A DNA stretch of 63,735 bases, counting the filler, from Reticulomyxa filosa (Eukaryota > Protista > Foraminifera): NCBI GenBank assembly GCA_000512085.1. It is 15 parts of 15 records of this genome, joined end to end, with 100 filler letters (N's around TTAATTAATTAA, not from the genome) between each part and the next. Parts side by side here need not be neighbours in the genome. Positions count along the whole stretch, not along the records: positions 1 to 15,811 come from ASPP01020131.1; 14 more parts are not named here. One strand, given 5' to 3'. Positions 191-15,811 of this stretch are shown in pieces (the first letter of the stretch is position 1; each line of letters begins with the position of its first letter). The position numbers and the translations under genes were made by a program. The notes beneath the pieces are model-generated. The model did no database searches, had not been told where the DNA came from, and saw nothing but the letters and a program-made list of their open reading frames with translations.

Positions 191-1210
191 AATCCACATA
201 CCAAAATGACCACTTCTGACAGAATTGACCTGATCCAACAAAGTGGAGCCTTGCCCAGGCTCGTTGATCTGCTGGGACATCCCTCCGTACGTGTCCAACA
301 TCCAGCTCTGCGTTGCATTGGAAACATGGTCACAGGCAACGCCGAACAAACACAAGTTCTTTTCTTTTTCCTTTGCTTTTTTTTTTTTGTGAACACAAAA
401 ATAAATAAATAAAATAAATAATAAATAAAAGCAAGTCTTAAATTGTGGCATGCTGAAAAAACTGGGTCCATTACTGGAATCGCCACATGCGACCATTCGG
501 AAGGAGGCTTGCTGGGCAGTGTCGAATGTGACAGGGACGAATGAAGAGCAAGTGCAACAAGTGATCGATGCAAACTTACTGCCTTCGCTGATCCATTTGC
601 TCACGTCAAATGACTCCGCGGTGCGACAAGAAGCCGCCTGGGCGCTAGCCAACATCACCAGCAGGGGGACTCCAGAACAAATCCACTTGCTTGTTGACCG
701 AGGTGCTGTCAAAGGCCTGATCAACGTATTGAGGCAAGCCACCGACGCACGCAATACCATGGCCATGCTGGAAGCCATTCAAAACATTTGTGAATTGGGA
801 AAGGCAATCAAAGATATCCATGGCGGGGTTAATTTGTACTCTGAATTCGTCGAAGAAGCAAAAGGCCTTCGTCTCGTATGTTTTTTTTGTTTTATTTTTT
901 TCGATGACTCAGGACAAAACATGTTTGTATACATATATATATGTGTATATGCAAGTTGGAAGAAATGCAAGCACAAGAGTTGAATTCGAAAATTCATGAT
1001 AAAGTCGAAGAGTTGCTATACAGATATTTTGAAGATGACAAATTAGCTCAATTGCACAACGACAATGACAATGATGACAATAGTAACAATGCAAATGGTA
1101 ATGACAATGACAATGAAATGGATGAAGAGGTTGATCTCACTGGCGATTTGATCACTGTCCATGCTCGAACAAATCAAGGGGACACAACCAACGACACTTA
1201 CAAATTTTGA
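2..1210 (+). CDS. KPNA: Importin-alpha (karyopherin alpha), 5'-partial; exons about 2-355, 432-875, 956-1210
   Basis: ARM-repeat motifs ALPRLVDLL..PALRCIGNMVTGNAEQTQ, KEACWAVSNV, QEAAWALANIT, and a C-terminus EFVEEAKG..LEEMQ..IHDKVEELLYRYF. GT-AG introns at 356-431 and 876-955 keep the frame. Confidence 0.93.
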
Positions 1211-1745: not shown

Positions 1746-4540
1746 ATGACTTTCAAAGAGAAAATACCTCTCTCTTATCAAACTAAACATTTGCTGGATT
1801 ACTGTTCTCTACTATAGTTTTTGAAAAGGGTTGTGCTGAAGGATAAAAAAAAAATTATTATTTGAGAAAATTAGGTGGCTTTGTGGACGATACTTGTGAC
1901 TATGGAAAAAACTCAAAGTTTGACCTTTAATGAAAAGCTAGCACTTGTATTATGCGAGCATTTTACACCAACAAGCTGGCATCGGATTCGGCTGTCTTGT
2001 TTCAAAGAAGCGTGGCAAAGTGTTTTTTGGGGCCAAACCTATTGTATCGACACACTGAAGGAGGTTCCATTTTTGTCATATGATGTTAGTAGCAGCCACG
2101 CACAACTTTTGCTTAAAAGCCTAAAAAAAAAGACAATATAAAAGTTTTGAATTCAGGATCGAAGCAAAAACATTAAACATAACAATAGGACAGCAACGAT
2201 ATTCTGTGCGCGGCATTAGACGTTAAGCAGAGGGTGGGATTGAGGATACATAAGAGCGAGTGTGTTGTTTTTTTTTTTTAAGCAAACTGACAAACACAAA
2301 TGACTTATTCACAGAAGAGGGATTTCTGTATTACCTCAAATTGTAAGAACTGTCAAGGATTGCACTTGTCTTGGGAAAAATATGCAGTTTTGGAGCATAT
2401 GCCATATATGCATATACATAGTTTTTTTATTTGTGTACTCTTGGCACATGAGCGTCCATTATTGCTTCCATTGATCAAAAAGTTAACATACACATAAACA
2501 CATTACAATATACTAACAGCATTTATTTCCAATGTGGGTATGTTTTATTCACTTCTCCCTTTTTTTTTTTTTTTAACCCCTTTTTTTTTTTGTTTGTTTA
2601 TAAGGAAAAATTTTTAAAAAATAAAAAACGAAATGGGATCGTAGGATATAACAGATCGCGTTTTAAATGTATTGGTTCGCGACTGGCTGGAAAATGGCAA
2701 GCAAAGTCGTGCTCTTTGCTATGCCGCCATTTGTGACAAAATGCATCACATGTTCCACCAAGACAACAAATGGGGTCGCCCTCTTCCTGAGTACAGAATC
2801 GCGCATATCCCCCATGTCCAAGTTGTCCGTGACAATGCCACACAGAAACGCTGCTATCTTTTGAAACCGGCCTTTTTGCAAAACTTATCAGTTTCTTTCC
2901 TTCTTTTTTTTTTTTAAAAGGGTTGTAACTAAATATTTTTTGCACCCAAAAAAAAAAAAAGAATTATGTATGCTGGTTCGAAGTCACCAGTCACACATGC
3001 CAGAAGTTTCATTGCTATTTGGGCAGTTGGATGGATTATCTACACTTCAAGCAAGCAGTTGACTCTTGTTTGTGTGTTTGTTTGTTTTGCTTACGCATGA
3101 TATTTGAATATGTTTTTGTTTTTATCTTTTTTTTTAAATAAATATCATTTACAAACAATAACATGCACAACATTCCAATGTAAAATTGGCACAATGTACA
3201 AAAGAACGAAACGGACTTAAATGGACTAACGCCTTACGTTCTCAATGTCACCAATGCAATCGTTCCTAGTGACGAATGCTGGAAGTTTTGGAAGAGTATA
3301 AAGCGGAAACACAGTTTAAACAAGTTTTTTTAAAAAAAAAGAAAAAAAGGAGAATATAAAATTTTTTTTTTCTGGACAGCCCCTTGTTACATGCATCAAT
3401 GCTATACTATATATATATGTACATACATATAGGAAGGCTTGGTTTGTTTTGTATGAATCTGTTGGATGGGGTGGGGAAACAGATATTCCCGTGGTGGACA
3501 TATTTTCGATGAATGTGTTTAAAGTTGGCCGGGTGTCGCTCCCGAACGTGCCATCACATTCGATTGGCACTTGGCACAATATTTTTAATCTGTGCAATTA
3601 CTCGTATTGTGGCAATCGCATTGTCACGTGTAGACTGATTACGTGTTCAGAGGGAGTTTTGTTTGTTTTTTTTTGTTTTTTTTTTTTGCAAATTTTGTTT
3701 TGTTTTTTTTTTTTTGTGTGTGGGTATGTATGTCTGTGTGTATGTTTGTGGTGGACCACACATGGTTGTGTAGGAAAGATAGGAGGTTAGAAATGGAACG
3801 ATGTGGGTGATAAACTACAGATGAAAATATCAATAAAGTCGCTTCCCTACAATATGAGCGAAAAAAAGCTGAAGCAGTGGATAGTGCAACAGGGGAACAT
3901 AACGGAAAAGAAAATTGTCGATGCGCTACATGTCGAAATACAAACGTTTGTTCGCAATCAATCCAAAACCAATTCTTATGAACACGATCGGTATGACATT
4001 AGCTTGCAGCTCTTTTTTCTCTCCAAAAAAGATCTGAAATGCGCTATCCGAAAACTGCAAGAGTTACAGACCAACAAAAATCTCCCGCTCCCCTTTCTTC
4101 ACATGCAGCTTAGTCTTGCTATGCTTCCATCCAAAACTCATGTTAATTTTCACTTGCTTTTACTGTTGCCTTTTCTTCGTTCCTTTCTTTTGCGTGACAT
4201 ATATTACTCTTTTAATAGCTCTTCAAGCCATTCAACCAAGTCAAGTTTTTTAACTTGTACAGCAAACTACGTCATGAGTTTCATTGCTCGGAGAAACCGG
4301 GTCACAAAGATATCCTATCTCAGTTAACAAAAATGGAGGAAAATGAAGGATAGAGTGCAAGATACAAGATCCAATATTTTTGTTTTTTTCTTTTCTTTTC
4401 CTTCTTTCCTCTCTTCCTCTTCTCACAGGAAGGATTCATCGCAGCGCCACAAAAAAAAAGATTGAGCAGTGGAGATAAGAAAAAATCAAAAAAAGATGAA
4501 CCAGAAAGCAAAGAAAATGAAGACAATCCCAATCACTTAA
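1746..4540 (+). CDS. Hypothetical multi-exon protein with a possible C-terminal RRM-like domain
   Basis: Coding-like blocks (1875-2110, 2640-2890, 2960-3060, 3433-3655, 3791-4100) separated by poly-T/A introns. KISIKSLPYNMSEKKLKQWI resembles RRM RNP2 plus helix A. Boundaries are uncertain. Confidence 0.4.
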
Positions 4541-5601
4541 ATGAGTTTTGATTTTATTTTTTCTTCTCTCTCTACCTCTCTGCTTCTCTCAATGTTGGAA
4601 GATATCATATCCAATGGTATTAAACATACAAAAAGCAAAACACGGGAACTTTCAAAACTTCGAGCCAACCATGATGTCCATGACAAATTACCATTTCAAT
4701 TATTCTGCAAACAAAGTGGTCTCCCACTTTCCTTGGAGCTTCACAATTCCAAACGGCCATGCCTCTCGGACCAATCTTTAACAGATATTTATGATTAGCC
4801 AAAGAGACTCACATTCATTGAGAGTTGATTTCTTCCTAATTTTTTATTTTTTAAATGGTGTAACAAAATCAAGACAAACCAGAGAACTAACTATGCTCTT
4901 CTAATATAGAAAATGTATCAAGGCACTTGTTTATAAAATCAGTAGAGAACCGAATCATCAAGCGAAAAAACATTATTGTTGACGTTACATCTTATTTTAT
5001 TGTCCTTCTGTTTCAAAGAATTTAGTTTATTATGGACATGAACGATAGCATGTTGGATAGATTGATATGTGTGTTTGGGCTTCTGTTTTTAAGGCATCTT
5101 AACGCTTTTTTTTTTTCTAGGTGCATAAAAAAATTCCATTGAACAACCTGTGAAAAAATTCTCTTCTTCTGCACAACTGGCCGAATATTTGGTAGTTTAC
5201 CTCCACTCCTCCGTGTTAACCGAATGACTGCGCATTTTTTCCTAGGCCACACATTTCATTTTATTAAGTTTTTTAAGGTTGTACGGGTGGGTGGAGAACT
5301 CTACAAATTGGAAATCAATTCTAACAAAAAAATTTCAAAAACTTTGTACAATCAACAAGCAAAAAGAAAAAGCAGGAAAATTGAGATTGCCTTTTATTCT
5401 CTCACCAGTGTTGTGTTTTGGCTTCCAAACAATCGTAAGTCAAAAAGAGTGATTAAATTACGGCAAAAAATATGTCAACCTATTTCAATCATATCCAGAG
5501 GAGGAAAGAAAAGAAACGAAAACAAAAAGGATTATCACTCCAGACTAAGCAAGTGTATCAAAAATGAATATGAAATGAAATGGATTTGTTTCTGAAGTTC
5601 A

Positions 5602-8186
5602 CTAATCAAAGGAACATATCAAAGTTGCTTTATCTAGACCAAGTTCTTTTAATGTCTTTTTTTTCTGATCATTGAGTTGCAAGCGTGGCATTGCTTGTGC
5701 CAAACTTATATGCTCTTTGCTACAGGTCAGTTCAACAAATCGATAAATTTGCTGTGAAAAGAGAAATGAAAAAAAAAAGCAAATAATGCCAAATAAACAA
5801 TAAGCAAAGAAGCAAAAAGTAGAACATATAAGATATTTCACTAACCTCGACTAACGCCGATTTTTTAAATCTGCGTTGGAGAACTCCACCATCGGGCAAG
5901 CGAACACGCAACACTGTAGAATCTGGGTCCGATTCTATATAAAAATTGTTATGAAAAGTCCATTTACGTATAGTCGCGTCATCATGGCCACCCTTTGACT
6001 TTTAAACAATCTCAATAAATTACAATCAATTTGACAAAAATGAAGCATTAACGTGAAGGCTCTGGATCTAAACGAACAGGTGTATCCTGTTGAACAAAAA
6101 AATACAACCAACTCAATTACTCTTTGTTCAAACGAATTGCACAAAGGAGTGTTAGAAAGAGATGTGAGGAAATGTCTTTTCGTTTCTGCTTTGTAGCAGT
6201 ATTTTGTCTTTTCTTTCAATTCATTGATTCATTTTTTTGTGTGTTTTTTTTGATAATAATGAAACTTTGTCTTTGATCTCGACATCAGTGGATTTTCGAT
6301 CATCATTGTTTGTTTTGCTGTTCTTATTGTCGTTAGAAGGTGCATTATCTGTCAATGATTCCAGCAATGCTTTGTTTAGTTCTTCATCTTCACCACCCAG
6401 CTGTATCAACAATGCACGACAAAAATATCAGGGTGTAATGTGTGGTCAATAGTTTCGAAAAGTTGAACACATACAACTTTAAAAAAACAAAAAACAAAAC
6501 AGCAGGCATTTGTGGGGAAGGAGTGGCTTTAATGCGCGGCTGATATCCAGATTTCTTTTTTGCAGAAGGATTTGGAGCATTTTCAATCCACTCAATTAAT
6601 TTGTCGCGGATCGCAGAAGCTTGAGCAGGGAATTTGTCAGCTGATGGTACAGGCAAAATGTTTTCCTGTCGTCCAGTGTGCGGATCGATGACACTGACAT
6701 GAGGAAATTCGGTGATTTTATAATATGAGCACATTTGTCGCCCAGCGTCGGTTGACCTTTCATGCTGTCATTTTTAAAAAACAGTTACAGCGTTGAGTTC
6801 GAGCAAGTTTACTTATATATACACATGCATATATTCTTATATATATATATATATATTATATACATTCACAACTCACAAACTCACAATTCACACTGGTCAT
6901 ATATATGCACCACCATAGGTACCCCGACACAAACCTGATAAAACAAAAAAGAAGATTTTATAAAATCAGAGGTTGTGGAATCTTTCCAAACGTCTCTGTT
7001 CAATGTATGCGATGCAAACTCGTCTTTGGATTGGACATTTAGCAAGATCCATTTGTTTTGTTTTTGTCCTTCCGCTTTCGCCTTTATACGTCATTTACAG
7101 TTTGATCAACAAACAAAGACAAAGAGATTCCTCCTTTTTTTTAAAAAAAGGTTAATTTTTTTTTTTAATTCTTTCACTAACTTGATCCCATGAACCTTCA
7201 TACTTGTACTCAGGGTCCCCAAACAAATCGGCCAAATGGTCAGACTTTTTTGTTTTCGGGCCTTTGTTCCATTCTTTGCCGATATTTCTTTTGTTTTGAT
7301 TTTTATTTGTTTGTATTGTTTTTGTTGACATCGTTTTGTCAAAATTTAAAAGTTAGTTGCACAACTCAAAAACAAGCAATTGTTATGTGGCTGCATTTCC
7401 AACGTCATAACAAAACCCAACAAATTGACCTCAACTTTGATGATGCTGGGGCATATCCAGGCCCAGTGAAAGCACTGTAATTGGCTGTATTAATTTTTTA
7501 AAATATTTTTTATTTACTTGATTTTTTTTATTATTAATGTGATCATTTTTTTTTTTTTTGGAATGAACTTTTTTTATGTTGAGCGCATCTCAAAAAAAAA
7601 AAAAAAAAAGGGGTTGTTTGTATATATTCTACATAACAAGGCAACAGTTGCTCCGTATAGGCACGATCAGCGGAACGGATTTCACCATCACCAAAGGAAT
7701 CCAACGCACTTCCATCGTCGATGTATTCTCTCTGTCCTGCACCGCTGGTTCCTCCAATTGCTCCCAACAAGGCAGGAATACCACTAACTCCCTCGCTTTT
7801 CCAATATTTGCATTCATTACATAACACACGCACAACAACAGTCCCCCGCCCTCCTTTCCAAGTGAAGAAGCAATTTTTTAAATCCCTCTCTTCTCATCTT
7901 TCTAAAATGCAAGTAGTCGGTTTTTTTTTTGTAACCTAAATGCCCGTGCGGAATTGGAAGGTAGAGTAGGGGCGTCATAACTGGAAACCCGGTTGATAGA
8001 CTGCAATTGAGAGATATCACCACCGGAAGACAGCCATCTGTCTACTGCAGTGTCTAAGTTCCACTCACACAGTTTTAAATATTCCTTGGCTGTATCAACG
8101 TCATCCGTGCCGGCAAGAGTTAAGAAGTTCATCAGTTTTTCCATTTGAGATTCACTCAAATCTGTCGAAGTATTTGTCGAAGTCAT
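5602..8186 (-). CDS. UBXN7: UBX domain protein 7 / Ubx5-like p97 adaptor (UBA-UAS-UIM-UBX), multi-exon
   Basis: UBA-like N-terminus (NFLTLAG..AKEYLKLCEWNLDTAVDRW), UAS domain (FASHTLNRDVW; YYKITEFPHVSVIDPHTG), UIM (EDEELNKALLESL) and UBX (LRVRLPDGGVLQRRF..LKELGL). Confidence 0.92.
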
Positions 8187-8809: not shown

Positions 8810-11800
8810 TTAGAAAGGCAGCCTTGCCCAAAATTTAATAACCTGTTTTGGTTTTACTAGTTTTTTATCATGTTTTTTCGATTCTTCATATGCACATTTA
8901 TATGCAGTAGCACAATGTTTCCATGTGAACAAATAGTGTGGAAACTGTTTTAATTGTATATCAGGAAGATATTTTTTCAATAAATGACTAAATTGTAAGC
9001 CTTCGTTTCCTGATGTGTTTCGTTTAGTTTGTCCTTGTTCATAAGCTATTTTACGCCACACGTTTAATATGCTCTTTGTGGTACCCAATGATGTCCTATT
9101 AACAAATTCTTTGACCTCTGTTTCAATTTCATTGGTCAAAGGTTGTTGATATATGTCAAGAACAAATGAAGCAATTGAATTTTCATCCAACTGCTCCGAT
9201 TGAACTGAAGTTTTTAATTGTTTCCACAATGCTCCAATATGTTTGACAAAGAGTTTACTGGTTTTATGGTTGGCATCATTTAATTTATCAAATATAATCC
9301 AATCTTTTTTTTCAAATTTCAAGTCTTTAAACAACTCTGTCAATTCTTTATCTATATTAACTTCGTCGATATTTCGAAATAAGTGAACAATAGCATCATT
9401 TACCATTTCCAATGCTCTCTGCTTTTGCAAAGGATACAAAGTGGAAAAACGTAAGCTGTTCCAAAATGATTGAAATTGAGCATCTTTGAGAGCTTCATAT
9501 TTGTTTTCAATGGCTGTAATGCAATTGGGAATGTCAAATTCATTGCGATATTCAAATAAAGGGATAATAAAAGTGATTTGTTGACGACCATGAACAAAAG
9601 TGTGATAGATATCACTTTCAATAGCAGCTAAGTTGAAATATTTGGATATATCAGATTGACCATAATCCAATACTGGAGTACTTCGTCGTTGAATGATTGC
9701 ATTTAACGTTTCTGGATTAAAACATAAAATATCGCGATCTGTGATATCAAACACGCTTTTCCAATTGCGTTGCTCATTATTATTTGAATTTTGTTCTTCT
9801 TTCTTTTCTTCAATAATCTGAATATGTGGATGTTTAGATTGCGCAAACTCTTTCAAAAATTCATTTTGTTGATGTTCCAAATGTCGAATTATTTGATAAA
9901 TACTGAATTGTGAATCATTTACATTGGAATTGGTGATGCATACTTGATCAATAGGTAGATCTTTAAAATCGCGTTGAAATTGTGGACAATTCGATCCAAA
10001 ATAATTCCAATATTTCACAAAATAATTCTTTGAACATTCATACAAATGTTTGAGCATTTGATCTTCTTGAATTTTATGCAATTCATCTGGCATCAATTGT
10101 CGAGAGTATTTGTTGTGAACATATTGGATCAAGCGTACAATATTTGGTAGATATTGCAGATACCAGATACACTCATCCCAATTCGATAGTTGAGCAGTGA
10201 GTGAATAACTATTAGCCAGAGATGGATTTGCAGTAAACACATGGAATAAATCTCTCCATGACAAAGGCTCAACTTTTAAAAATAATTGTGGGAGATGCTC
10301 TATCTTATAACACTTATCTAATTCTTTGATTTCCTCAATTTCACTCATCAATTCTAACCACTTTTTCTTCTTGTCATCATCTGATATAATTTCACTCTTG
10401 TTCCGGAGTTTAATGAACTCGGCTTTGCAATTAAAAAATGTTGAATACTCTTTGTCCAACTTTTCTTCAAATTCACAAATTACTTGCAAATCATTGTTTG
10501 GCAATCCTTTAGGATACCATTCTTTAAATTTTTCAAAAAAGTTTTTAATCCATAGATGAATGGCAATGCATAGCAGCTCTTCACTCAATTTTGTCAGTAC
10601 TTTTAATTTTTCAAAAAGAATCTTAATCTTTCTCCATAAATACTTAGATGAATTCTCTTGATTAGTTTGTCCTATCAATTGCTGAATTTTCTTAGTATCT
10701 TGTGGGATACTTTCATTTCGTAAAAATAATAACAAATGGTGCAACAATTGCAACAATGTGGGTATTAAAGGTTTCAATTTACTCGATTTGCATTGAAGAG
10801 ATGTCATATATCTCTTAAAATAACAGAGCCAGCTCTCTTTCATATCTATTTCTGTTGTATCATTTTGTTGGATTGGCTGTTTGAGAATTGTCTTGACAAT
10901 GGAAGCTCCACGACCATTCATTTGACATTTCACTTGTTTCAGAAGGTCGTCTGACTCGTCGATTGAAAGTGCATTATTGTTCAAACAACCATGCACTATT
11001 AAAGGCTCATTCGAGGTAGTTGATGTAGGCAAACATGATTCGGAGTCGGCCAATAGCAATTGAAATGGATTGCTTTTCATAAATGGAAGAATGGACAGAA
11101 AATGGAAACCTAATGTTGCCACAATTATATCAACTGTATCTCTGATAGGTAATTCACTTTTGAAATCGCTCCAATAAGTGAAGACTTGCCAAAAGATTTT
11201 TTGTTTTGTGATTCCCAATAAGTCATGACGTAGAATATATTTATGCAATCCTGTCATTTTTTTTTAACTAGCAAAATTGCAAAGAAAAATACATAAATTT
11301 AAGAGAGAAAAAAGACTCAAAAGCTAAAACACAAAGAAATTGACTTTGTATTTGATCGGTGGCGTTGTAGTTATCATGGAAACGGATTAATATTAGTGAT
11401 TCTGCAAGCATTTGGGGAGAAAAGAGCGTATCCAATGAGTGATTGTCTAACATATCTGCAAACTTATCATTCATAATTTCCAGTATATATTCCATAAAAG
11501 CACTATCTCCATACACTCCGATGAAAGGATTGAACGAAATATTACGCAATGTCCTTTTACACAATGAATTAAATATAGTACTTGTCTTTAATTCCTTCAA
11601 AAAAGGAAATTGTGTTCCAGCACTTGGGTGAGCGAATATGATTTCAATCCAATGCATTCCTTTCCTTGCGTACAGTTGTTTCAAAAACCATACATATAAA
11701 GCATGTTCATACTGTTTATAGAAACTACTGAAATTTGACAATGATTCACTTATATTTTCCAATAATCTGAATATACTTTGATTTTCTTTGAGTTGTGAGA

Positions 11801-14800
11801 GATCAAAATTCTCATTAACCATCACGGAAATAAGGTTGGTAACATCCACTTTCACTTTTGAAATTTTCGCAACTGAGCCAAGACTGGTGGTATTTTTTTC
11901 ATTACATAACTGACTCCAAGTGTTGTTATCCTTCTTTATCTCTTCGTTCAAGGTTATCAACTCGAAACAACGATTCAACAGCACTGCTTCCTCAGAATGC
12001 AAGGTAAGGCTGTTGTTTAACTTTGTATGCAACACTATTTCTTTATATATTTGCATTTTGAAAATGGGTCCATTGTCGATCTGTGAATACAATTTCCGCA
12101 AAATGGACGTATATACTTTATTCTTCTCTACATTCTCCACACGTTTGATTGCGGCAAGTAAGTCTAGAATGAAATCAGCATATTTTTCCTGGGATGTATT
12201 TCGGTTTTCGCGATAGTCTTTGAGGACAGAATCGACTAGTTCTTCATGTTCCAAAAAGCCATGCTTAATTATTTTTTGTTCTTCAATTGCAAATCCGTCT
12301 ATTCTCAAATATATGATACCAAGGCGACGAATTTCAATTTTTCGTGCACTTTGTAGTAGCTCATTCATAAGACTTTCACTCTTTACTAGCATGCATTGGG
12401 ATAAGAAATTTAAAAAATTGTGATAAAGCATTGCGCTCTCGTTTATGTCAAAGTTTGCTCTTATTGGGATCTCCTTCCAAAGAATCTGGACCGTTTCCAT
12501 AAGCCATGATTCGGGATCTGGAACATGTTTCACACGTATTTTATCCGAAGAGACAGAGATTAGATATGCGTAATGGAAAATTATTTGACGAAAATAATGT
12601 ATGGTCACTTCAATGGTGGCAATCGACAATTTGCCACATAATAGTAATGCCATAGACACAATGATATTTTGTAGAATAATTTGTTGATTTTGCGTATGCA
12701 AATGCGATGAAAATTTATATCGAACCAAGTCCATCACATATTTATGGATTACCTTCAGAGAATAGTCCATATCCCATTGTGTTAAATCATCATTTCCCAT
12801 TGACATTTCTTCCAACTTTGTCGCAACTGAACCAAGATGATCGTTTGGCGACTTGGGACATTCCAAGAGTTTTTGTTGACACCAATTATGAATAGAACGA
12901 CTGAATGGAAAAGAATGCTGCACATATGTTTGAATTGAATACAATTGAGGGTCAATTACAGCTGAAAGCAGGTAATTGGAGTCAATACTCACTGGCTTCA
13001 TTTCAACTAATTCTTCATTTCTCAATGCCTTTTCAAAAAATTGGACATACCATGGCAACTCATCATTTTTTTTGCTTTCGACGTATTTCTTTGAATTATT
13101 TGTAATATGTGCTATTAAGTGTAAATGGTGACAGTAAATAAAACAAATAAAACACAAATAGCAAAACTGCAAAACCACCATTTTGATAAATGGCAGATAA
13201 CACATTGACAAAAGCCAAAGTTACCAAAGTATCAACGGTATTGTGATACTCTACGAAATAAGAACCTTTTCTTTTTTTCATTCCATTTTCCTCTAGATCA
13301 CGCAAAATAGTCATAACGGATTTATGCTTTGTGGCGTTGAACAAGAGTCCTTTTAGTCGATACTTGAGGATTTCTTCACCATCCTTGAAATCAAACACTA
13401 ATGGCAATAGCTTTTTTTCTTCCAACGGATTAATGGAACGTGGAAAATGTAGCCTTCCAAAAGCTTTCTGTGCACACTCGAGTAAATGCTACAAAAAAAA
13501 AAAGTGTAAATATCTATCATTTATTTAAAGAAAATACGAAAAAGCAATACTTCACCTGTTTGGATTGTTTTTCAGCAACATCATTCACTGAGAGTTTCAA
13601 ATCATTTTTTAATGATATTGTGTTTGTTGACAGTAAGTAATCGACATAGACAATCTTCCACTTCCTATTTTTTTTTTAAAGAAAAAGAGACTGCCTTTTA
13701 TTTTTTAGTAAAAAAAAAAGGGGTTTGTTTTTCTAAACTGTCGGAATATTAAAGGAAATGATAATTCTTTGTTGGATTTTCCATTTAATTCTTTGATAGA
13801 TTTTTTGCTGGATTCTCTGCTGGAATGAATAAGTAAAATAACTAATTTTTGTTTTTGACTGTTATTTGAATCATTATAAAACTGATAATGTTCAAGTTGG
13901 AGAATATGAATGATTTGCTCCAATTGATTTTTACTTTTGGGTGTATAACGACATTGCAAGATCAATACATCATTCCGTAGTTCATTTTGAAAAACGCTTT
14001 GATCGTCTTTTCAAATTGCTCTACTTTTTTGAATGATCGAATTTTTTGAGTGCAGTGAACCCGTTCCATTGGAATATTATATTCCATGTCGTTTGTGAGT
14101 ATCATCACCATTTGATCTTTAGATTTCTTTTGCTGGATCTTTATGATATCTTCCTTTTTTATTTTAATTTTATTTGTATTCACAAGAGATAAGTTATATC
14201 TCAAATTAAAAAAAAAAATTATCTCTGTTTACCAAGCAATAAAATTTTATATCTTTATCGGTCTGTATATTCGTCATTATTTCTGGTCGATACAATGGTT
14301 TGAATAGATTGAGTAATTTCGTTTCCAATTCTTTTTCGTCAAATCGGACAGTGTCTAAATTTGTTGTTTGTGGTGACTCTTTTTTTCATCATTTTGATAT
14401 TCATTTGCTTCCTTTGCTTTTCGAACAGCCAAATAAAGTAATGCTGAATAAAGGGTATCCTGACAATATCCACAAAACACGTCAGATAGATTGCTCGATT
14501 TGGATTTATTTAACAACATTTTTTCCATGGATTCAATACACGATTCCATGTTACTTGGCAATGAATTGCGATATGAAATGAGCTGTTTCTCAAAACGACT
14601 GAGAAATGCAAGCTATGTGTTATTTCACATGTGTACATTTATATCCCATACATGTCATACTTATCTAAAAAAAAAGTTAACTGGCATATTTGGACTGTGG
14701 GCATCCTCTTTCTGAACAACGACAACACATTTGAAATTTTCATGAACATAACAATCTCTACTTTCAGTTCCCAATGCCACTCGACAATACACATTCCCTA

Positions 14801-15811
14801 TTTATTTTGAAATAATTTTATAATGCGTATATATTTACATTAAAAAAATAAAATAAAAATACCTGAAGGTCTTCTTTGATATCTTTGATTCAACATATCA
14901 TACAAACTTTCATAAATACTTTCCAAATTGTGCAAAATGACAGTTTTACCAATATTCATACAATCAATAATTTTGTTCAATTGATTATAACTGGTAATAT
15001 TCGAATACATATCTTGAGGAAAATAACTTCCAAATAAAAATACTTGATTGTAATTCAAAATATCGTATTCCAAAAGTAATTGCCAAGAATAATATTTTTC
15101 ACTGATTACCATACAATGTCGACTCACCATCAAACCATTTGATGACTGATCACATTCCATTAAATTTCTTTCCACACACATGACAGGAGTCCATTTCTTT
15201 AATTCTAGCAAAATTTCCTCTTTTGTTTTACCTAACACTTCCACTAAAATCTTCTGCAGCTGTTCATTGTAATTGGTACTGTCAACTCCACCAAAGTTAC
15301 GAAGGTACCCTTCTAATGGTTGCTTGTCAAAAAATTCAGAAAGAGTGGCTTGATATTTGATCAATGCATAAAAATCACGTGCTCCAAAGAAATCACTATT
15401 TCCATTGGGTTTAAATGCATTCGTTTGATCTTTTATTATTTTTTCATATGCCATTATTATTTTTGTAATTGCCTGTTCTGAAAATGTGGGTTCGAGAATT
15501 ACTTTTGCTGTTTCCATCAGGTCATTGTGGTCCATTAAAGGAATGAAATGCATAATCATTCGATTCATTTTGGCAGCATCCAAAGACCAATTCGAAATGC
15601 CAACAAATGCAATTTTGGGATGTTCCAATAATTGATGCAATATTTTCAAAGGATTGTGTGGTGATTGTTCTGCCAAACCAATCTCATCAAATAAAAATAA
15701 TGTGGTAGTGGTTTTGTCATTGGAATATCTTTCAGTCTGATCCCATAATTCTTTGATAGCACTTGGCTTGCAACTTCTTGTACCTTGGAATGAAATGCAT
15801 TGCAATGGTTT
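8810..15811 (-). CDS. RNF213: RNF213/mysterin-like giant AAA+ ATPase / E3-module protein, 5'-partial, multi-exon
   Basis: RNF213 AAA motifs FLFDEIGLAEQSPHNPLKILHQLLE, AFVGISNWSLDAAKMNR, FFGARDFYALIK, LFGSYFPQD, LHNLESIYESLYDMLNQRY, YCRVALGT..CYVHENFKCVVV and FLSRFEKQ. Also an E3-core-like WFLKQLYARKG and a CTD-like YFNLAAIE..FVHGRQQI. Confidence 0.9.

What the first reader, a model, noticed from the sequence alone, without database searches (positions are those of the whole stretch)
8810..15811. RNF213/mysterin-type antibacterial AAA+/E3 machine in a protist, lacking the RING domain
Seen in sequence: colinear RNF213 motifs run from the Walker B of a catalytic AAA unit (FLFDEIG) through the later AAA units, the E3-shell/core (ADFILDLL, WFLKQLYARKG) and the CTD. 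No Cys/His RING cluster appears in the 647-aa ORF where RNF213 carries it, just before the FFxDL motif. Established: animal RNF213 is a cell-autonomous immune sensor that ubiquitylates bacterial LPS independently of its RING. Inference: this bacterivorous protist encodes a mysterin-type surveillance protein with a remodelled E3 module.
Basis: partly seen in the sequence, partly recalled or inferred. Interest (0 to 1): 0.8.

Follow-up and report, generated by a model that had tools for sequence, protein, structure and literature searches.

The report
RNF213-like gene copy, ligase centres lost
This is the back two-thirds of a real RNF213-type giant ATPase gene in the foraminifer Reticulomyxa filosa, but it lacks both known ubiquitin-ligase centres (no RING, a broken RZ finger), so calling it an antibacterial E3 ligase is not justified.

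Summary
The piece is a whole 15,811-bp Reticulomyxa filosa contig (ASPP01020131.1). Its minus strand carries eight exons (2158 codons) of an RNF213-like gene that runs off the contig end. GenBank splits it into two hypothetical proteins.

Homology to RNF213 holds along the whole visible length:
- AAA4 Walker B to AAA5: phmmer E 2e-32 to human and mouse RNF213.
- E3 module: hhalign probability 97%; VIA Z 12.1 against human residues 3701-4322.
- RZ region plus C-terminal domain: Foldseek E 2e-11, and only RNF213 entries match.

No RING is present. That is usual in this family: only 6 of 44 long relatives have one, and those with names are all animals.

All 14 R. filosa paralogues that cover it have Ser or Pro in place of the Cys nucleophile and lack the catalytic His. 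This copy alone has also lost two of the four zinc ligands (His to Asn, Cys to Arg). It also has two 1-nt frame breaks in homopolymer runs.

At least 17 paralogues form a foraminiferal clade separate from animal RNF213. The verdict is a genuine family member and a ligase-dead variant, possibly a decaying copy. An antibacterial role is untested.

The parts
14863..15811 (-). Exon 1 (cut by the contig end): AAA4 from just before Walker B, the AAA4 lid and the start of AAA5
   Evidence: phmmer against PDB matches RNF213 only, E 1.8e-32, human 2844-3161 in tagged numbering. The big search found 1495 relatives.
15677..15697 (-). Walker B motif FLFDEIG of the AAA4 unit
   Evidence: Translation. It aligns to VVLDEVGLAE of RNF213. 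The downstream FVGISNWSLDAAKMNR aligns to FVGISNWALDPAKMNR.
14682..14797 (-). Exon 2 (AAA5): NVYCRVALGTESRDC...NMP. Flanked by GT-AG introns at 14862-14798 and 14681-14613.
   Evidence: Sequence and frames. Colinear phmmer hits to Diplonema, Naegleria and mollusc relatives at +306 to +333 residues.
14233..14612 (-). Exon 3 (AAA5, begins LAFLSRFEKQ). Has a 1-nt frame break in the A7 run at 14386-14380.
   Evidence: The reading frame changes with no intron while paralogue proteins align straight through. Colinear hit to Naegleria.
13739..14153 (-). Exon 4. Has a 1-nt frame break in the T5/A4 run at 13994-13985. Preceded by intron 14232-14154.
   Evidence: Paralogue P0017 aligns across the break.
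13556..13664 (-). Exon 5. Preceded by intron 13738-13665.
   Evidence: Joining the splice sites gives FRQKWKIVYVD, which matches paralogue FRQKWKIFYVD.
13168..13488 (-). Exon 6 (end of the AAA ring and hinge). Flanked by introns 13555-13489 and 13167-13089.
   Evidence: The A1 profile gives colinear hits to long relatives.
11345..13088 (-). Exon 7 (581 aa): the counterpart of the RNF213 E3 module (E3-back, shell and core), without a RING
   Evidence: hhalign against the relatives' mid region: probability 97.2%, E 3e-11, 513 columns. AF2 model pLDDT 77. VIA Z 12.1 to human RNF213 3701-4322, next best 6.6.
12339..12401 (-). Place where animal relatives carry the RING insert. Here it is a short helical stretch (SQCMLVKSESLMNELLQSARK).
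   Evidence: Mapping of the RING insert onto the alignment and translation.
8813..11250 (-). Exon 8 (812 aa): RZ-like finger plus C-terminal domain. Stop codon at 8812-8810. Preceded by intron 11344-11251.
   Evidence: Local profile hits E 7e-9 to 1e-6, colinear. jackhmmer reaches shark and bird RNF213. AF2 pLDDT 79. Foldseek's top 9 hits are all RNF213, E 1.8e-11 to 1.2e-7. VIA Z 14.3 to human 4404-4979.
10883..10996 (-). Degenerate RZ-type finger, VHGCLNNNALSIDESDDLLKQVKCQMNGRGASIVKTIL. At human RNF213 positions 4505, 4509, 4516, 4525, 4528 and 4537 it has Cys, Asn (for His), Ser (for Cys), Cys, Arg (for Cys) and Leu (for His).
   Evidence: Translation and DNA. Column table. Paralogue fingers. 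Residue roles from PMC11549300.

Best explanation
This is the 3' 6.5 kb (eight exons, about 2158 codons) of one member of a lineage-specific expansion of RNF213-like giant AAA+ proteins in the foraminifer Reticulomyxa filosa. The visible part is colinear with human RNF213 from the AAA4 Walker B (about residue 2845) to the end of the C-terminal domain: AAA4, AAA5-6, hinge, E3 scaffold, RZ region, CTD.

Shown here:
- The AAA4 catalytic motifs that can be seen are intact.
- The E3 scaffold and CTD folds are kept.
- There is no RING, as in other non-animal relatives.
- The RZ finger is non-catalytic in all R. filosa copies seen (Ser or Pro for the Cys nucleophile, no His base).
- In this copy the finger cannot even bind zinc normally (His to Asn, Cys to Arg).

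Inferred: the protein family works as an ATP-driven scaffold or sensor, not as a transthiolating ubiquitin ligase. This would be comparable to the ligase-independent but ATPase-dependent coat formation of RNF213 on Toxoplasma vacuoles. This particular copy, with two frame breaks and a uniquely damaged finger, is a degenerate and possibly decaying paralogue.
For: Identity of the contig and annotation.

AAA4-5 homology: E 1.8e-32, RNF213 only; 1495 relatives.

Colinearity: the RZ finger sits 1300-1750 residues after the AAA4 match and 640-800 residues before the C-terminus in 44 relatives. In the window the figures are about 1431 and about 700.

E3 module.

RZ plus CTD.

RZ residues. All 14 paralogues keep the four zinc ligands (Cys, His, Cys, Cys) and none has the nucleophile Cys. 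The window alone has Asn and Arg at two ligand positions. The Arg column is Cys in 72 of 72 non-foram relatives.

No RING.

Expansion and clade: (foraminiferal clade with SH-aLRT 99, separate from the animal RNF213 clade at 98).

Frame breaks.
Against: - The N-terminal half (N-arm, AAA1-3, AAA4 Walker A) lies beyond the contig end and could hold another catalytic domain.
- The two frame breaks are in homopolymer runs, so they could be assembly errors. No reads could be found to check them.
- The 581- and 812-codon exons are free of stops in 33% GC DNA, which argues against long-standing decay.
- The structure models were built from alignments that include true RNF213s. The fold matches are therefore not fully independent of the sequence alignment.
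- No expression or functional data exist for R. filosa. The only hint of expression is a Bolivina argentea sequence from the EukProt set, which I take to be transcript-derived and which covers only the AAA region.
Confidence: 0.75

Rival explanations
1. The protein is still a ubiquitin (or other) ligase. It would use a remodelled centre: another cysteine, the Ser in the finger, or a domain in the unseen N-terminal half. It would mark bacteria in the cytosol or phagosome.
For: The E3 scaffold and CTD folds are kept. Paralogues keep a zinc-binding finger. The family is expanded like an immune gene family. The N-terminus is unseen.
Against: The nucleophile Cys and the His base, which are required in human RNF213 (PMC11549300), are absent in 14 of 14 paralogues. 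This copy also lacks two zinc ligands. There is no RING or other Cys/His cluster anywhere in 8810-15811. I know of no precedent for a Ser nucleophile in E2-to-E3 transfer.
Confidence: 0.12
2. This locus is a dead pseudogene copy of the family. The frame breaks are real and the finger mutations reflect relaxed selection. This reading is compatible with the family-level reading above.
For: There are two 1-nt frame breaks where paralogue proteins read straight through. This is the only copy of 15 with Asn and Arg at zinc-ligand positions.
Against: Both breaks sit in homopolymer runs, the typical place for assembly errors. There is no stop codon in 1393 codons of exons 7-8 despite AT-rich DNA. All seven introns keep GT-AG ends.
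Confidence: 0.35
3. The similarity is only that of a generic dynein/midasin-type AAA protein and does not extend past the AAA ring.
For: Pfam gives only a faint AAA_9 (dynein) hit on exon 1. Plain phmmer and a foram-only profile of the two large ORFs find nothing in PDB.
Against: All PDB hits of exon 1 are RNF213. Profile, profile-profile and fold comparisons link exons 7 and 8 colinearly and specifically to the RNF213 E3 module and CTD. Those folds have no other counterpart in PDB (PMC7311170).
Confidence: 0.01
4. The gene is animal contamination or a recent transfer from an animal.
For: RNF213 is best known from vertebrates.
Against: At least 17 diverged paralogues sit on separate R. filosa contigs, and there is a Bolivina homologue. 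The foraminiferal clade is separate from the animal clade. The gene has short AT-rich GT-AG introns and 30-36% GC like the rest of the contig.
Confidence: 0.02

Closest known systems
Vertebrate RNF213 (mysterin), e.g. PDB 8S24, 9JW1, 6TAX
   Same: The order AAA4, AAA5-6, E3 scaffold, RZ region, CTD is colinear. The AAA4 Walker B and following motifs are nearly identical. The E3-module and CTD folds match specifically. The spacing from AAA4 to the RZ finger to the C-terminus is the same.
   Different: There is no RING. The RZ finger has C-x4-C instead of C-x2-C and lacks the Cys4516 and His4537 equivalents. In this copy it also lacks the His4509 and Cys4528 equivalents. The stretch between AAA4 and the C-terminus is about 250 residues shorter. 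The gene belongs to a separate foraminiferal clade and is multi-copy. The N-arm and CBM20 are unseen.
RING-less 'RZ-type domain-containing' giants of other protists and fungi (Naegleria gruberi D2VJ31, Diplonema papillatum DIPPA_29980, Racocetra/Cetraspora proteins)
   Same: Same architecture without a RING. They are the nearest non-foraminiferal relatives in the tree (Diplonema group). They are uncharacterised.
   Different: Those proteins keep a Pfam-recognisable RZ finger (PF20173, E 1e-9 to 1e-21), mostly with the nucleophile Cys. The R. filosa fingers are not recognised by Pfam and lack that Cys.
ZNFX1 (the other RZ-finger protein)
   Same: It shares only the RZ-type finger idea.
   Different: ZNFX1 is an SF1 helicase, with no six-unit AAA ring, E3 scaffold or CTD. 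It is not a relative of this gene outside the finger.
Dynein and midasin AAA rings
   Same: A concatenated ring of six AAA units in one polypeptide.
   Different: There is no significant match here beyond a faint Pfam AAA_9 hit, and the downstream domains are RNF213-specific.

Membership tests
RNF213 family (broad sense: AAA ring + E3 scaffold + RZ + CTD) | Dynein-like AAA core with a catalytic AAA4 (Walker B DE, sensor and Arg motifs) | tested here: met
   FLFDEIG and FVGISNWSLDAAKMNR align to RNF213 AAA4, E 1.8e-32. The AAA5 exons are colinear.
RNF213 family (broad sense: AAA ring + E3 scaffold + RZ + CTD) | AAA1-AAA3 (including catalytic AAA3), linker and N-arm | not testable with these tools
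   The gene runs off the end of a 15,811-bp contig and no whole genome is held.
RNF213 family (broad sense: AAA ring + E3 scaffold + RZ + CTD) | E3 module scaffold fold (E3-back, shell and core), unique to RNF213 in PDB | tested here: met
   hhalign probability 97.2%, E 3e-11. VIA Z 12.1, 426 residues, human 3701-4322, next best Z 6.6.
RNF213 family (broad sense: AAA ring + E3 scaffold + RZ + CTD) | C-terminal domain after the RZ finger | tested here: met
   Foldseek's top 9 hits are all RNF213, E 1.8e-11 to 1.2e-7, with the next hit at E 0.5. VIA Z 14.3 to human 4404-4979. jackhmmer link.
RNF213 family (broad sense: AAA ring + E3 scaffold + RZ + CTD) | RZ-type zinc finger with four zinc ligands (human C4505, H4509, C4525, C4528) | tested here: not met
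   The window has Cys, Asn, Cys, Arg at these positions. Pfam PF20173 does not score it. Paralogues keep all four ligands but with C-x4-C spacing.
RNF213 as an active RZ-type E3 ligase | Nucleophile Cys (human C4516) and general-base His (human H4537) in the RZ finger | tested here: not met
   The window has Ser and Leu. None of the 14 paralogues has the nucleophile Cys. Residue roles come from PMC11549300.
Animal RNF213 proper | C3HC4 RING inserted in the E3-back domain | tested here: not met
   There is no RING pattern or Cys/His cluster in any frame of 8810-15811. The insert site holds a short helix.
Animal RNF213 proper | Placement within the animal RNF213 clade | tested here: not met
   In the AAA-region tree of 125 rows, the foraminiferal clade (99) groups with Diplonema and unnamed sequences. 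The animal clade (98) is separate. The tree is unrooted.
Animal RNF213 proper | Ubiquitylation of LPS and antibacterial coat formation | not testable with these tools
   This needs biochemistry and infection or feeding assays.

The most novel reading that the evidence does not exclude
Foraminifera maintain a large, diversified family of RNF213-type AAA+ machines that have dispensed with both ligase centres. This would show that the ancestral, conserved job of the RNF213 scaffold is ATP-driven assembly or sensing on target surfaces, such as ingested or invading microbes, with ubiquitin ligation as a later or dispensable add-on.
Probability: 0.2. Interest if true: 0.65.

Novelty: new variant of a known kind. 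Interest (0 to 1): 0.42.

Why it matters
RNF213 is studied almost only in vertebrates, as the Moyamoya disease gene and as a ligase that ubiquitylates bacterial LPS.

This locus, and the relatives found through it, show three things:
- The whole architecture (AAA ring, E3 scaffold, RZ finger, CTD) is old and widespread in eukaryotes.
- In this sample the RING is found only in animal members, where names are available.
- At least one protist lineage has expanded the family while losing the catalytic residues of the RZ finger.

That gives natural 'ligase-dead' variants with which to ask what the ATPase and scaffold do on their own.

For this single locus the practical message is more modest. It is a mis-split, partial and possibly decaying copy, and it should not be annotated as an antibacterial E3 ligase.

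Tried and rejected
- Pfam on all large ORFs and on eight paralogues gave nothing useful.
- phmmer of the 647- and 815-aa ORFs against PDB gave no RNF213 hit. Foram-only profiles A1 and A2 also gave none. The link needed intermediate relatives.
- Local jackhmmer from exon 7 did not converge on the long relatives. hhalign was needed.
- No sequencing run was listed. Read laying was therefore not used, and the frame breaks and finger substitutions could not be checked against reads.
- Literature searches for protist RNF213 homologues found nothing relevant.
- I considered an alternative intron that would bypass frame break 1. I rejected it because the phases do not match and the paralogue proteins align through the site.
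- I checked whether unnamed intron-less metagenome relatives might be prokaryotic. The one contig readable has BRCT/RTT107 and FHA neighbours, so it is eukaryotic.
- dN/dS against paralogues was not attempted. The nearest copy is 66% identical in protein, so synonymous sites would be saturated.
- The spliced protein was never joined. Every exon was searched, aligned and folded separately by reference.
Full report
**What the piece is**

The AAA exon is 99% identical to ETO14264.1 (RFI_23106, partial) of Reticulomyxa filosa, which sits on a contig of exactly 15,811 bp. The record is ASPP01020131.1 of GCA_000512085.1. The piece is therefore a whole contig of this freshwater foraminifer, and the gene is cut by the contig end.

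GenBank calls two separate genes over the gene studied here (361 aa and 1760 aa, neither with Pfam hits), plus a thioredoxin-like gene further along the contig. No whole genome is held for the window. No sequencing run was listed.

**Gene model**

I derived the model by hand from the sequence and from alignment to paralogue proteins. It is on the minus strand.

| Feature | Coordinates |
|---|---|
| E1 | 15811-14863 |
| E2 | 14797-14682 |
| E3 | 14612-14233 |
| E4 | 14153-13739 |
| E5 | 13664-13556 |
| E6 | 13488-13168 |
| E7 | 13088-11345 |
| E8 | 11250-8813 |
| Stop codon | 8812-8810 |

The seven introns are 65-94 nt long and all have GT-AG ends.

The exons sum to 6472 nt, which is two short of 2158 codons. 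The reading frame slips by one base twice without an intron: in the A7 run at 14386-14380 and in the TTTTTCAAAA stretch at 13994-13985. Paralogue proteins align straight across both sites. These are either homopolymer assembly errors or real frameshifts, and I could not decide which.

The spliced protein was never joined. Every search, alignment and fold used single exons by reference.

**Is it RNF213?**

- *AAA part.* Exon 1 matches only RNF213 chains in PDB (E 1.8e-32). The alignment runs from the AAA4 Walker B (FLFDEIGLAE against VVLDEVGLAE) through FVGISNWSLDAAKMNR into AAA5. A full HMMER scan of 1.84 billion representatives gave 1495 relatives, 862 of them at E 1e-10 or better and many 3300-6000 aa long. 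Named relatives include shark and bird RNF213, RNF213-like proteins of Haliotis, Lottia, Lineus and bivalves, Naegleria gruberi D2VJ31 ('RZ-type domain-containing protein'), Diplonema papillatum, and Glomeromycota.
- *Direct searches of the large ORFs.* Plain searches with the two large ORFs found only R. filosa fragments and nothing in PDB or Pfam.
- *Colinear profile hits.* Foram profiles searched against the long relatives gave weak but strictly colinear hits, E 7e-9 to 1e-6 for the C-terminal part. All ten relatives tested carry a Pfam RZ finger (PF20173, E 6e-9 to 2e-21) exactly where the foram profile aligns.
- *Spacing.* Across 44 relatives the RZ finger lies 1300-1750 residues after the AAA4 match and 640-800 residues before the C-terminus. 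The window values are about 1431 and about 700.
- *C-terminal exon.* jackhmmer from exon 8 converges on nearly all long relatives, including vertebrate RNF213.
- *E3-module exon.* For exon 7, profile-profile comparison with the relatives' mid region gives probability 97.2%, E 3e-11, over 513 columns. Shared anchors include FPFS and the WFLKQLY...G motif.
- *Structure.* AlphaFold models built from these alignments have pLDDT 79 (exon 8) and 77 (exon 7). For exon 8 the nine best Foldseek PDB hits are all RNF213 (E 1.8e-11 to 1.2e-7), and the next hit is at E 0.5. VIA-align gives Z 14.3 to human 4404-4979. For exon 7, RNF213 entries stand out by TM-score (0.38-0.42 against 0.22 or less), and VIA-align gives Z 12.1 over 426 residues to human 3701-4322, with the next best at 6.6. 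According to PMC7311170 these E3 and CTD folds have no other counterpart in PDB.

One caveat is that the models rest on alignments that include true RNF213s.

**RING**

No RING pattern or open Cys/His-rich stretch exists in any frame of 8810-15811. In the alignment, animal relatives carry the RING as an insert. At that place the window, Naegleria, Diplonema, Racocetra and others have only a short stretch.

Only 6 of 44 long RZ-bearing relatives have a RING pattern. The four of these that have names are animals. RING absence is therefore the common state outside animals, not a peculiarity of this gene.

In human RNF213 the RING-independent ubiquitylation of bacteria depends on the RZ finger. 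Its zinc ligands are C4505, H4509, C4525 and C4528, the nucleophile is C4516 and the general base is H4537. H4509A or C4516S abolishes the activity (PMC11549300).

The window's counterpart lies at 10996-10883 and reads VHGCLNNNALSIDESDDLLKQVKCQMNGRGASIVKTIL. At the six positions it has Cys, Asn, Ser, Cys, Arg and Leu.

Fourteen other R. filosa paralogues that cover the finger all keep the four ligands, as C-x3-H...C-x4-C. None has a Cys at the nucleophile position; they have Ser or Pro. The seven of them in alignment A4 also lack a His at the base position.

The window is the only copy with Asn and Arg at ligand positions. The Arg column is Cys in 72 of 72 non-foram relatives. Each change is a single base away from His or Cys: AAT against CAT, and CGT against TGT.

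Pfam does not recognise any R. filosa finger. By the known mechanism the whole R. filosa family looks ligase-dead, and this copy is the most degenerate.

**Family and phylogeny**

At least 16 other R. filosa protein fragments overlap the same position of exon 7, at 36-61% identity. A further search added nine more fragments. Bolivina argentea, another foraminifer, has a homologue of the AAA region in the EukProt set.

In a tree of the AAA region (125 rows, quick IQ-TREE, unrooted) the foraminiferal sequences form one clade (SH-aLRT 99). They group with Diplonema and unnamed environmental sequences (97) and are separate from the animal RNF213 clade (98). This argues for a lineage-specific expansion. 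It argues against contamination or recent transfer from animals.

**How it most likely works**

Shown:
- an RNF213-type AAA4 with intact Walker B and following motifs;
- a conserved E3 scaffold and CTD;
- no RING;
- a non-catalytic RZ-like finger.

Inferred: the family acts as ATP-driven scaffolds or sensors rather than transthiolating ligases. A known parallel is that RNF213 coats on Toxoplasma vacuoles need the ATPase but not the RZ finger (PMC11549300). A role in handling bacteria is an analogy only.

This copy may be decaying, given its two frame breaks and uniquely broken finger. However, its two large exons hold 1393 stop-free codons in AT-rich DNA, and the breaks lie in homopolymers. 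An intact gene with assembly errors therefore remains plausible.

**Verdict**

This is a genuine RNF213-family member in a protist, and a variant that lacks both ligase centres. The family's presence in protists and fungi is already visible in public databases, but I found no paper discussing it. Interest is moderate. The claim of an antibacterial E3 machine is not supported.

Noticed in passing
window 14549-8810 and 15811-14661: GenBank annotates this single RNF213-like gene as two separate hypothetical proteins (361 aa RFI_23106 and a 1760-aa product). Presumably the gene caller had to work around the frame breaks.
   Followed up: partly
window 6221-7331 (minus strand): An annotated 244-aa gene with a Thioredoxin_7 (PF13899) hit lies next to the RNF213-like gene.
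   Followed up: no
window 450-983 (plus strand): An ORF with three Armadillo repeats (PF00514, E 1.8e-25). It is probably an exon of an importin-alpha or beta-catenin-like gene.
   Followed up: no
L002 1-2365 and 10001-20533 (metagenome scaffold ERZ23488602 BOEU19-1 scaffold_14): An intron-poor environmental eukaryote contig carries two RNF213-like giants (4843 and 3510 aa) about 7.6 kb apart, near FHA and BRCT/RTT107 genes. The 3510-aa one (P0049) also lacks the RZ nucleophile Cys (Asn instead), so loss of this residue is not confined to Reticulomyxa.
   Followed up: partly
alignment A4, RZ columns (relatives P0053, P0055, P0078, P0146): Many fungal, protist and some animal relatives have C-x-C-G-[FY/E] instead of C-x3-H at the start of the RZ finger. 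The second zinc ligand there may be a Cys two residues after the first rather than the His.
   Followed up: no
P0173 (Haliotis RNF213-like) around residues 3130-3815: At the RING site this mollusc protein has a RING-like insert that fails the strict C3HC4 pattern (CSHCESEFEAPPVELPCKDKICLRCF...). This suggests RING decay within animals too.
   Followed up: no
R. filosa contig of 14,736 bp holding RFI_28755 (P0022) and RFI_28756 (P0008): A second paralogue is likewise split into neighbouring annotated genes (an AAA part and an E3-module part). The mis-annotation may therefore be systematic for this family.
   Followed up: no
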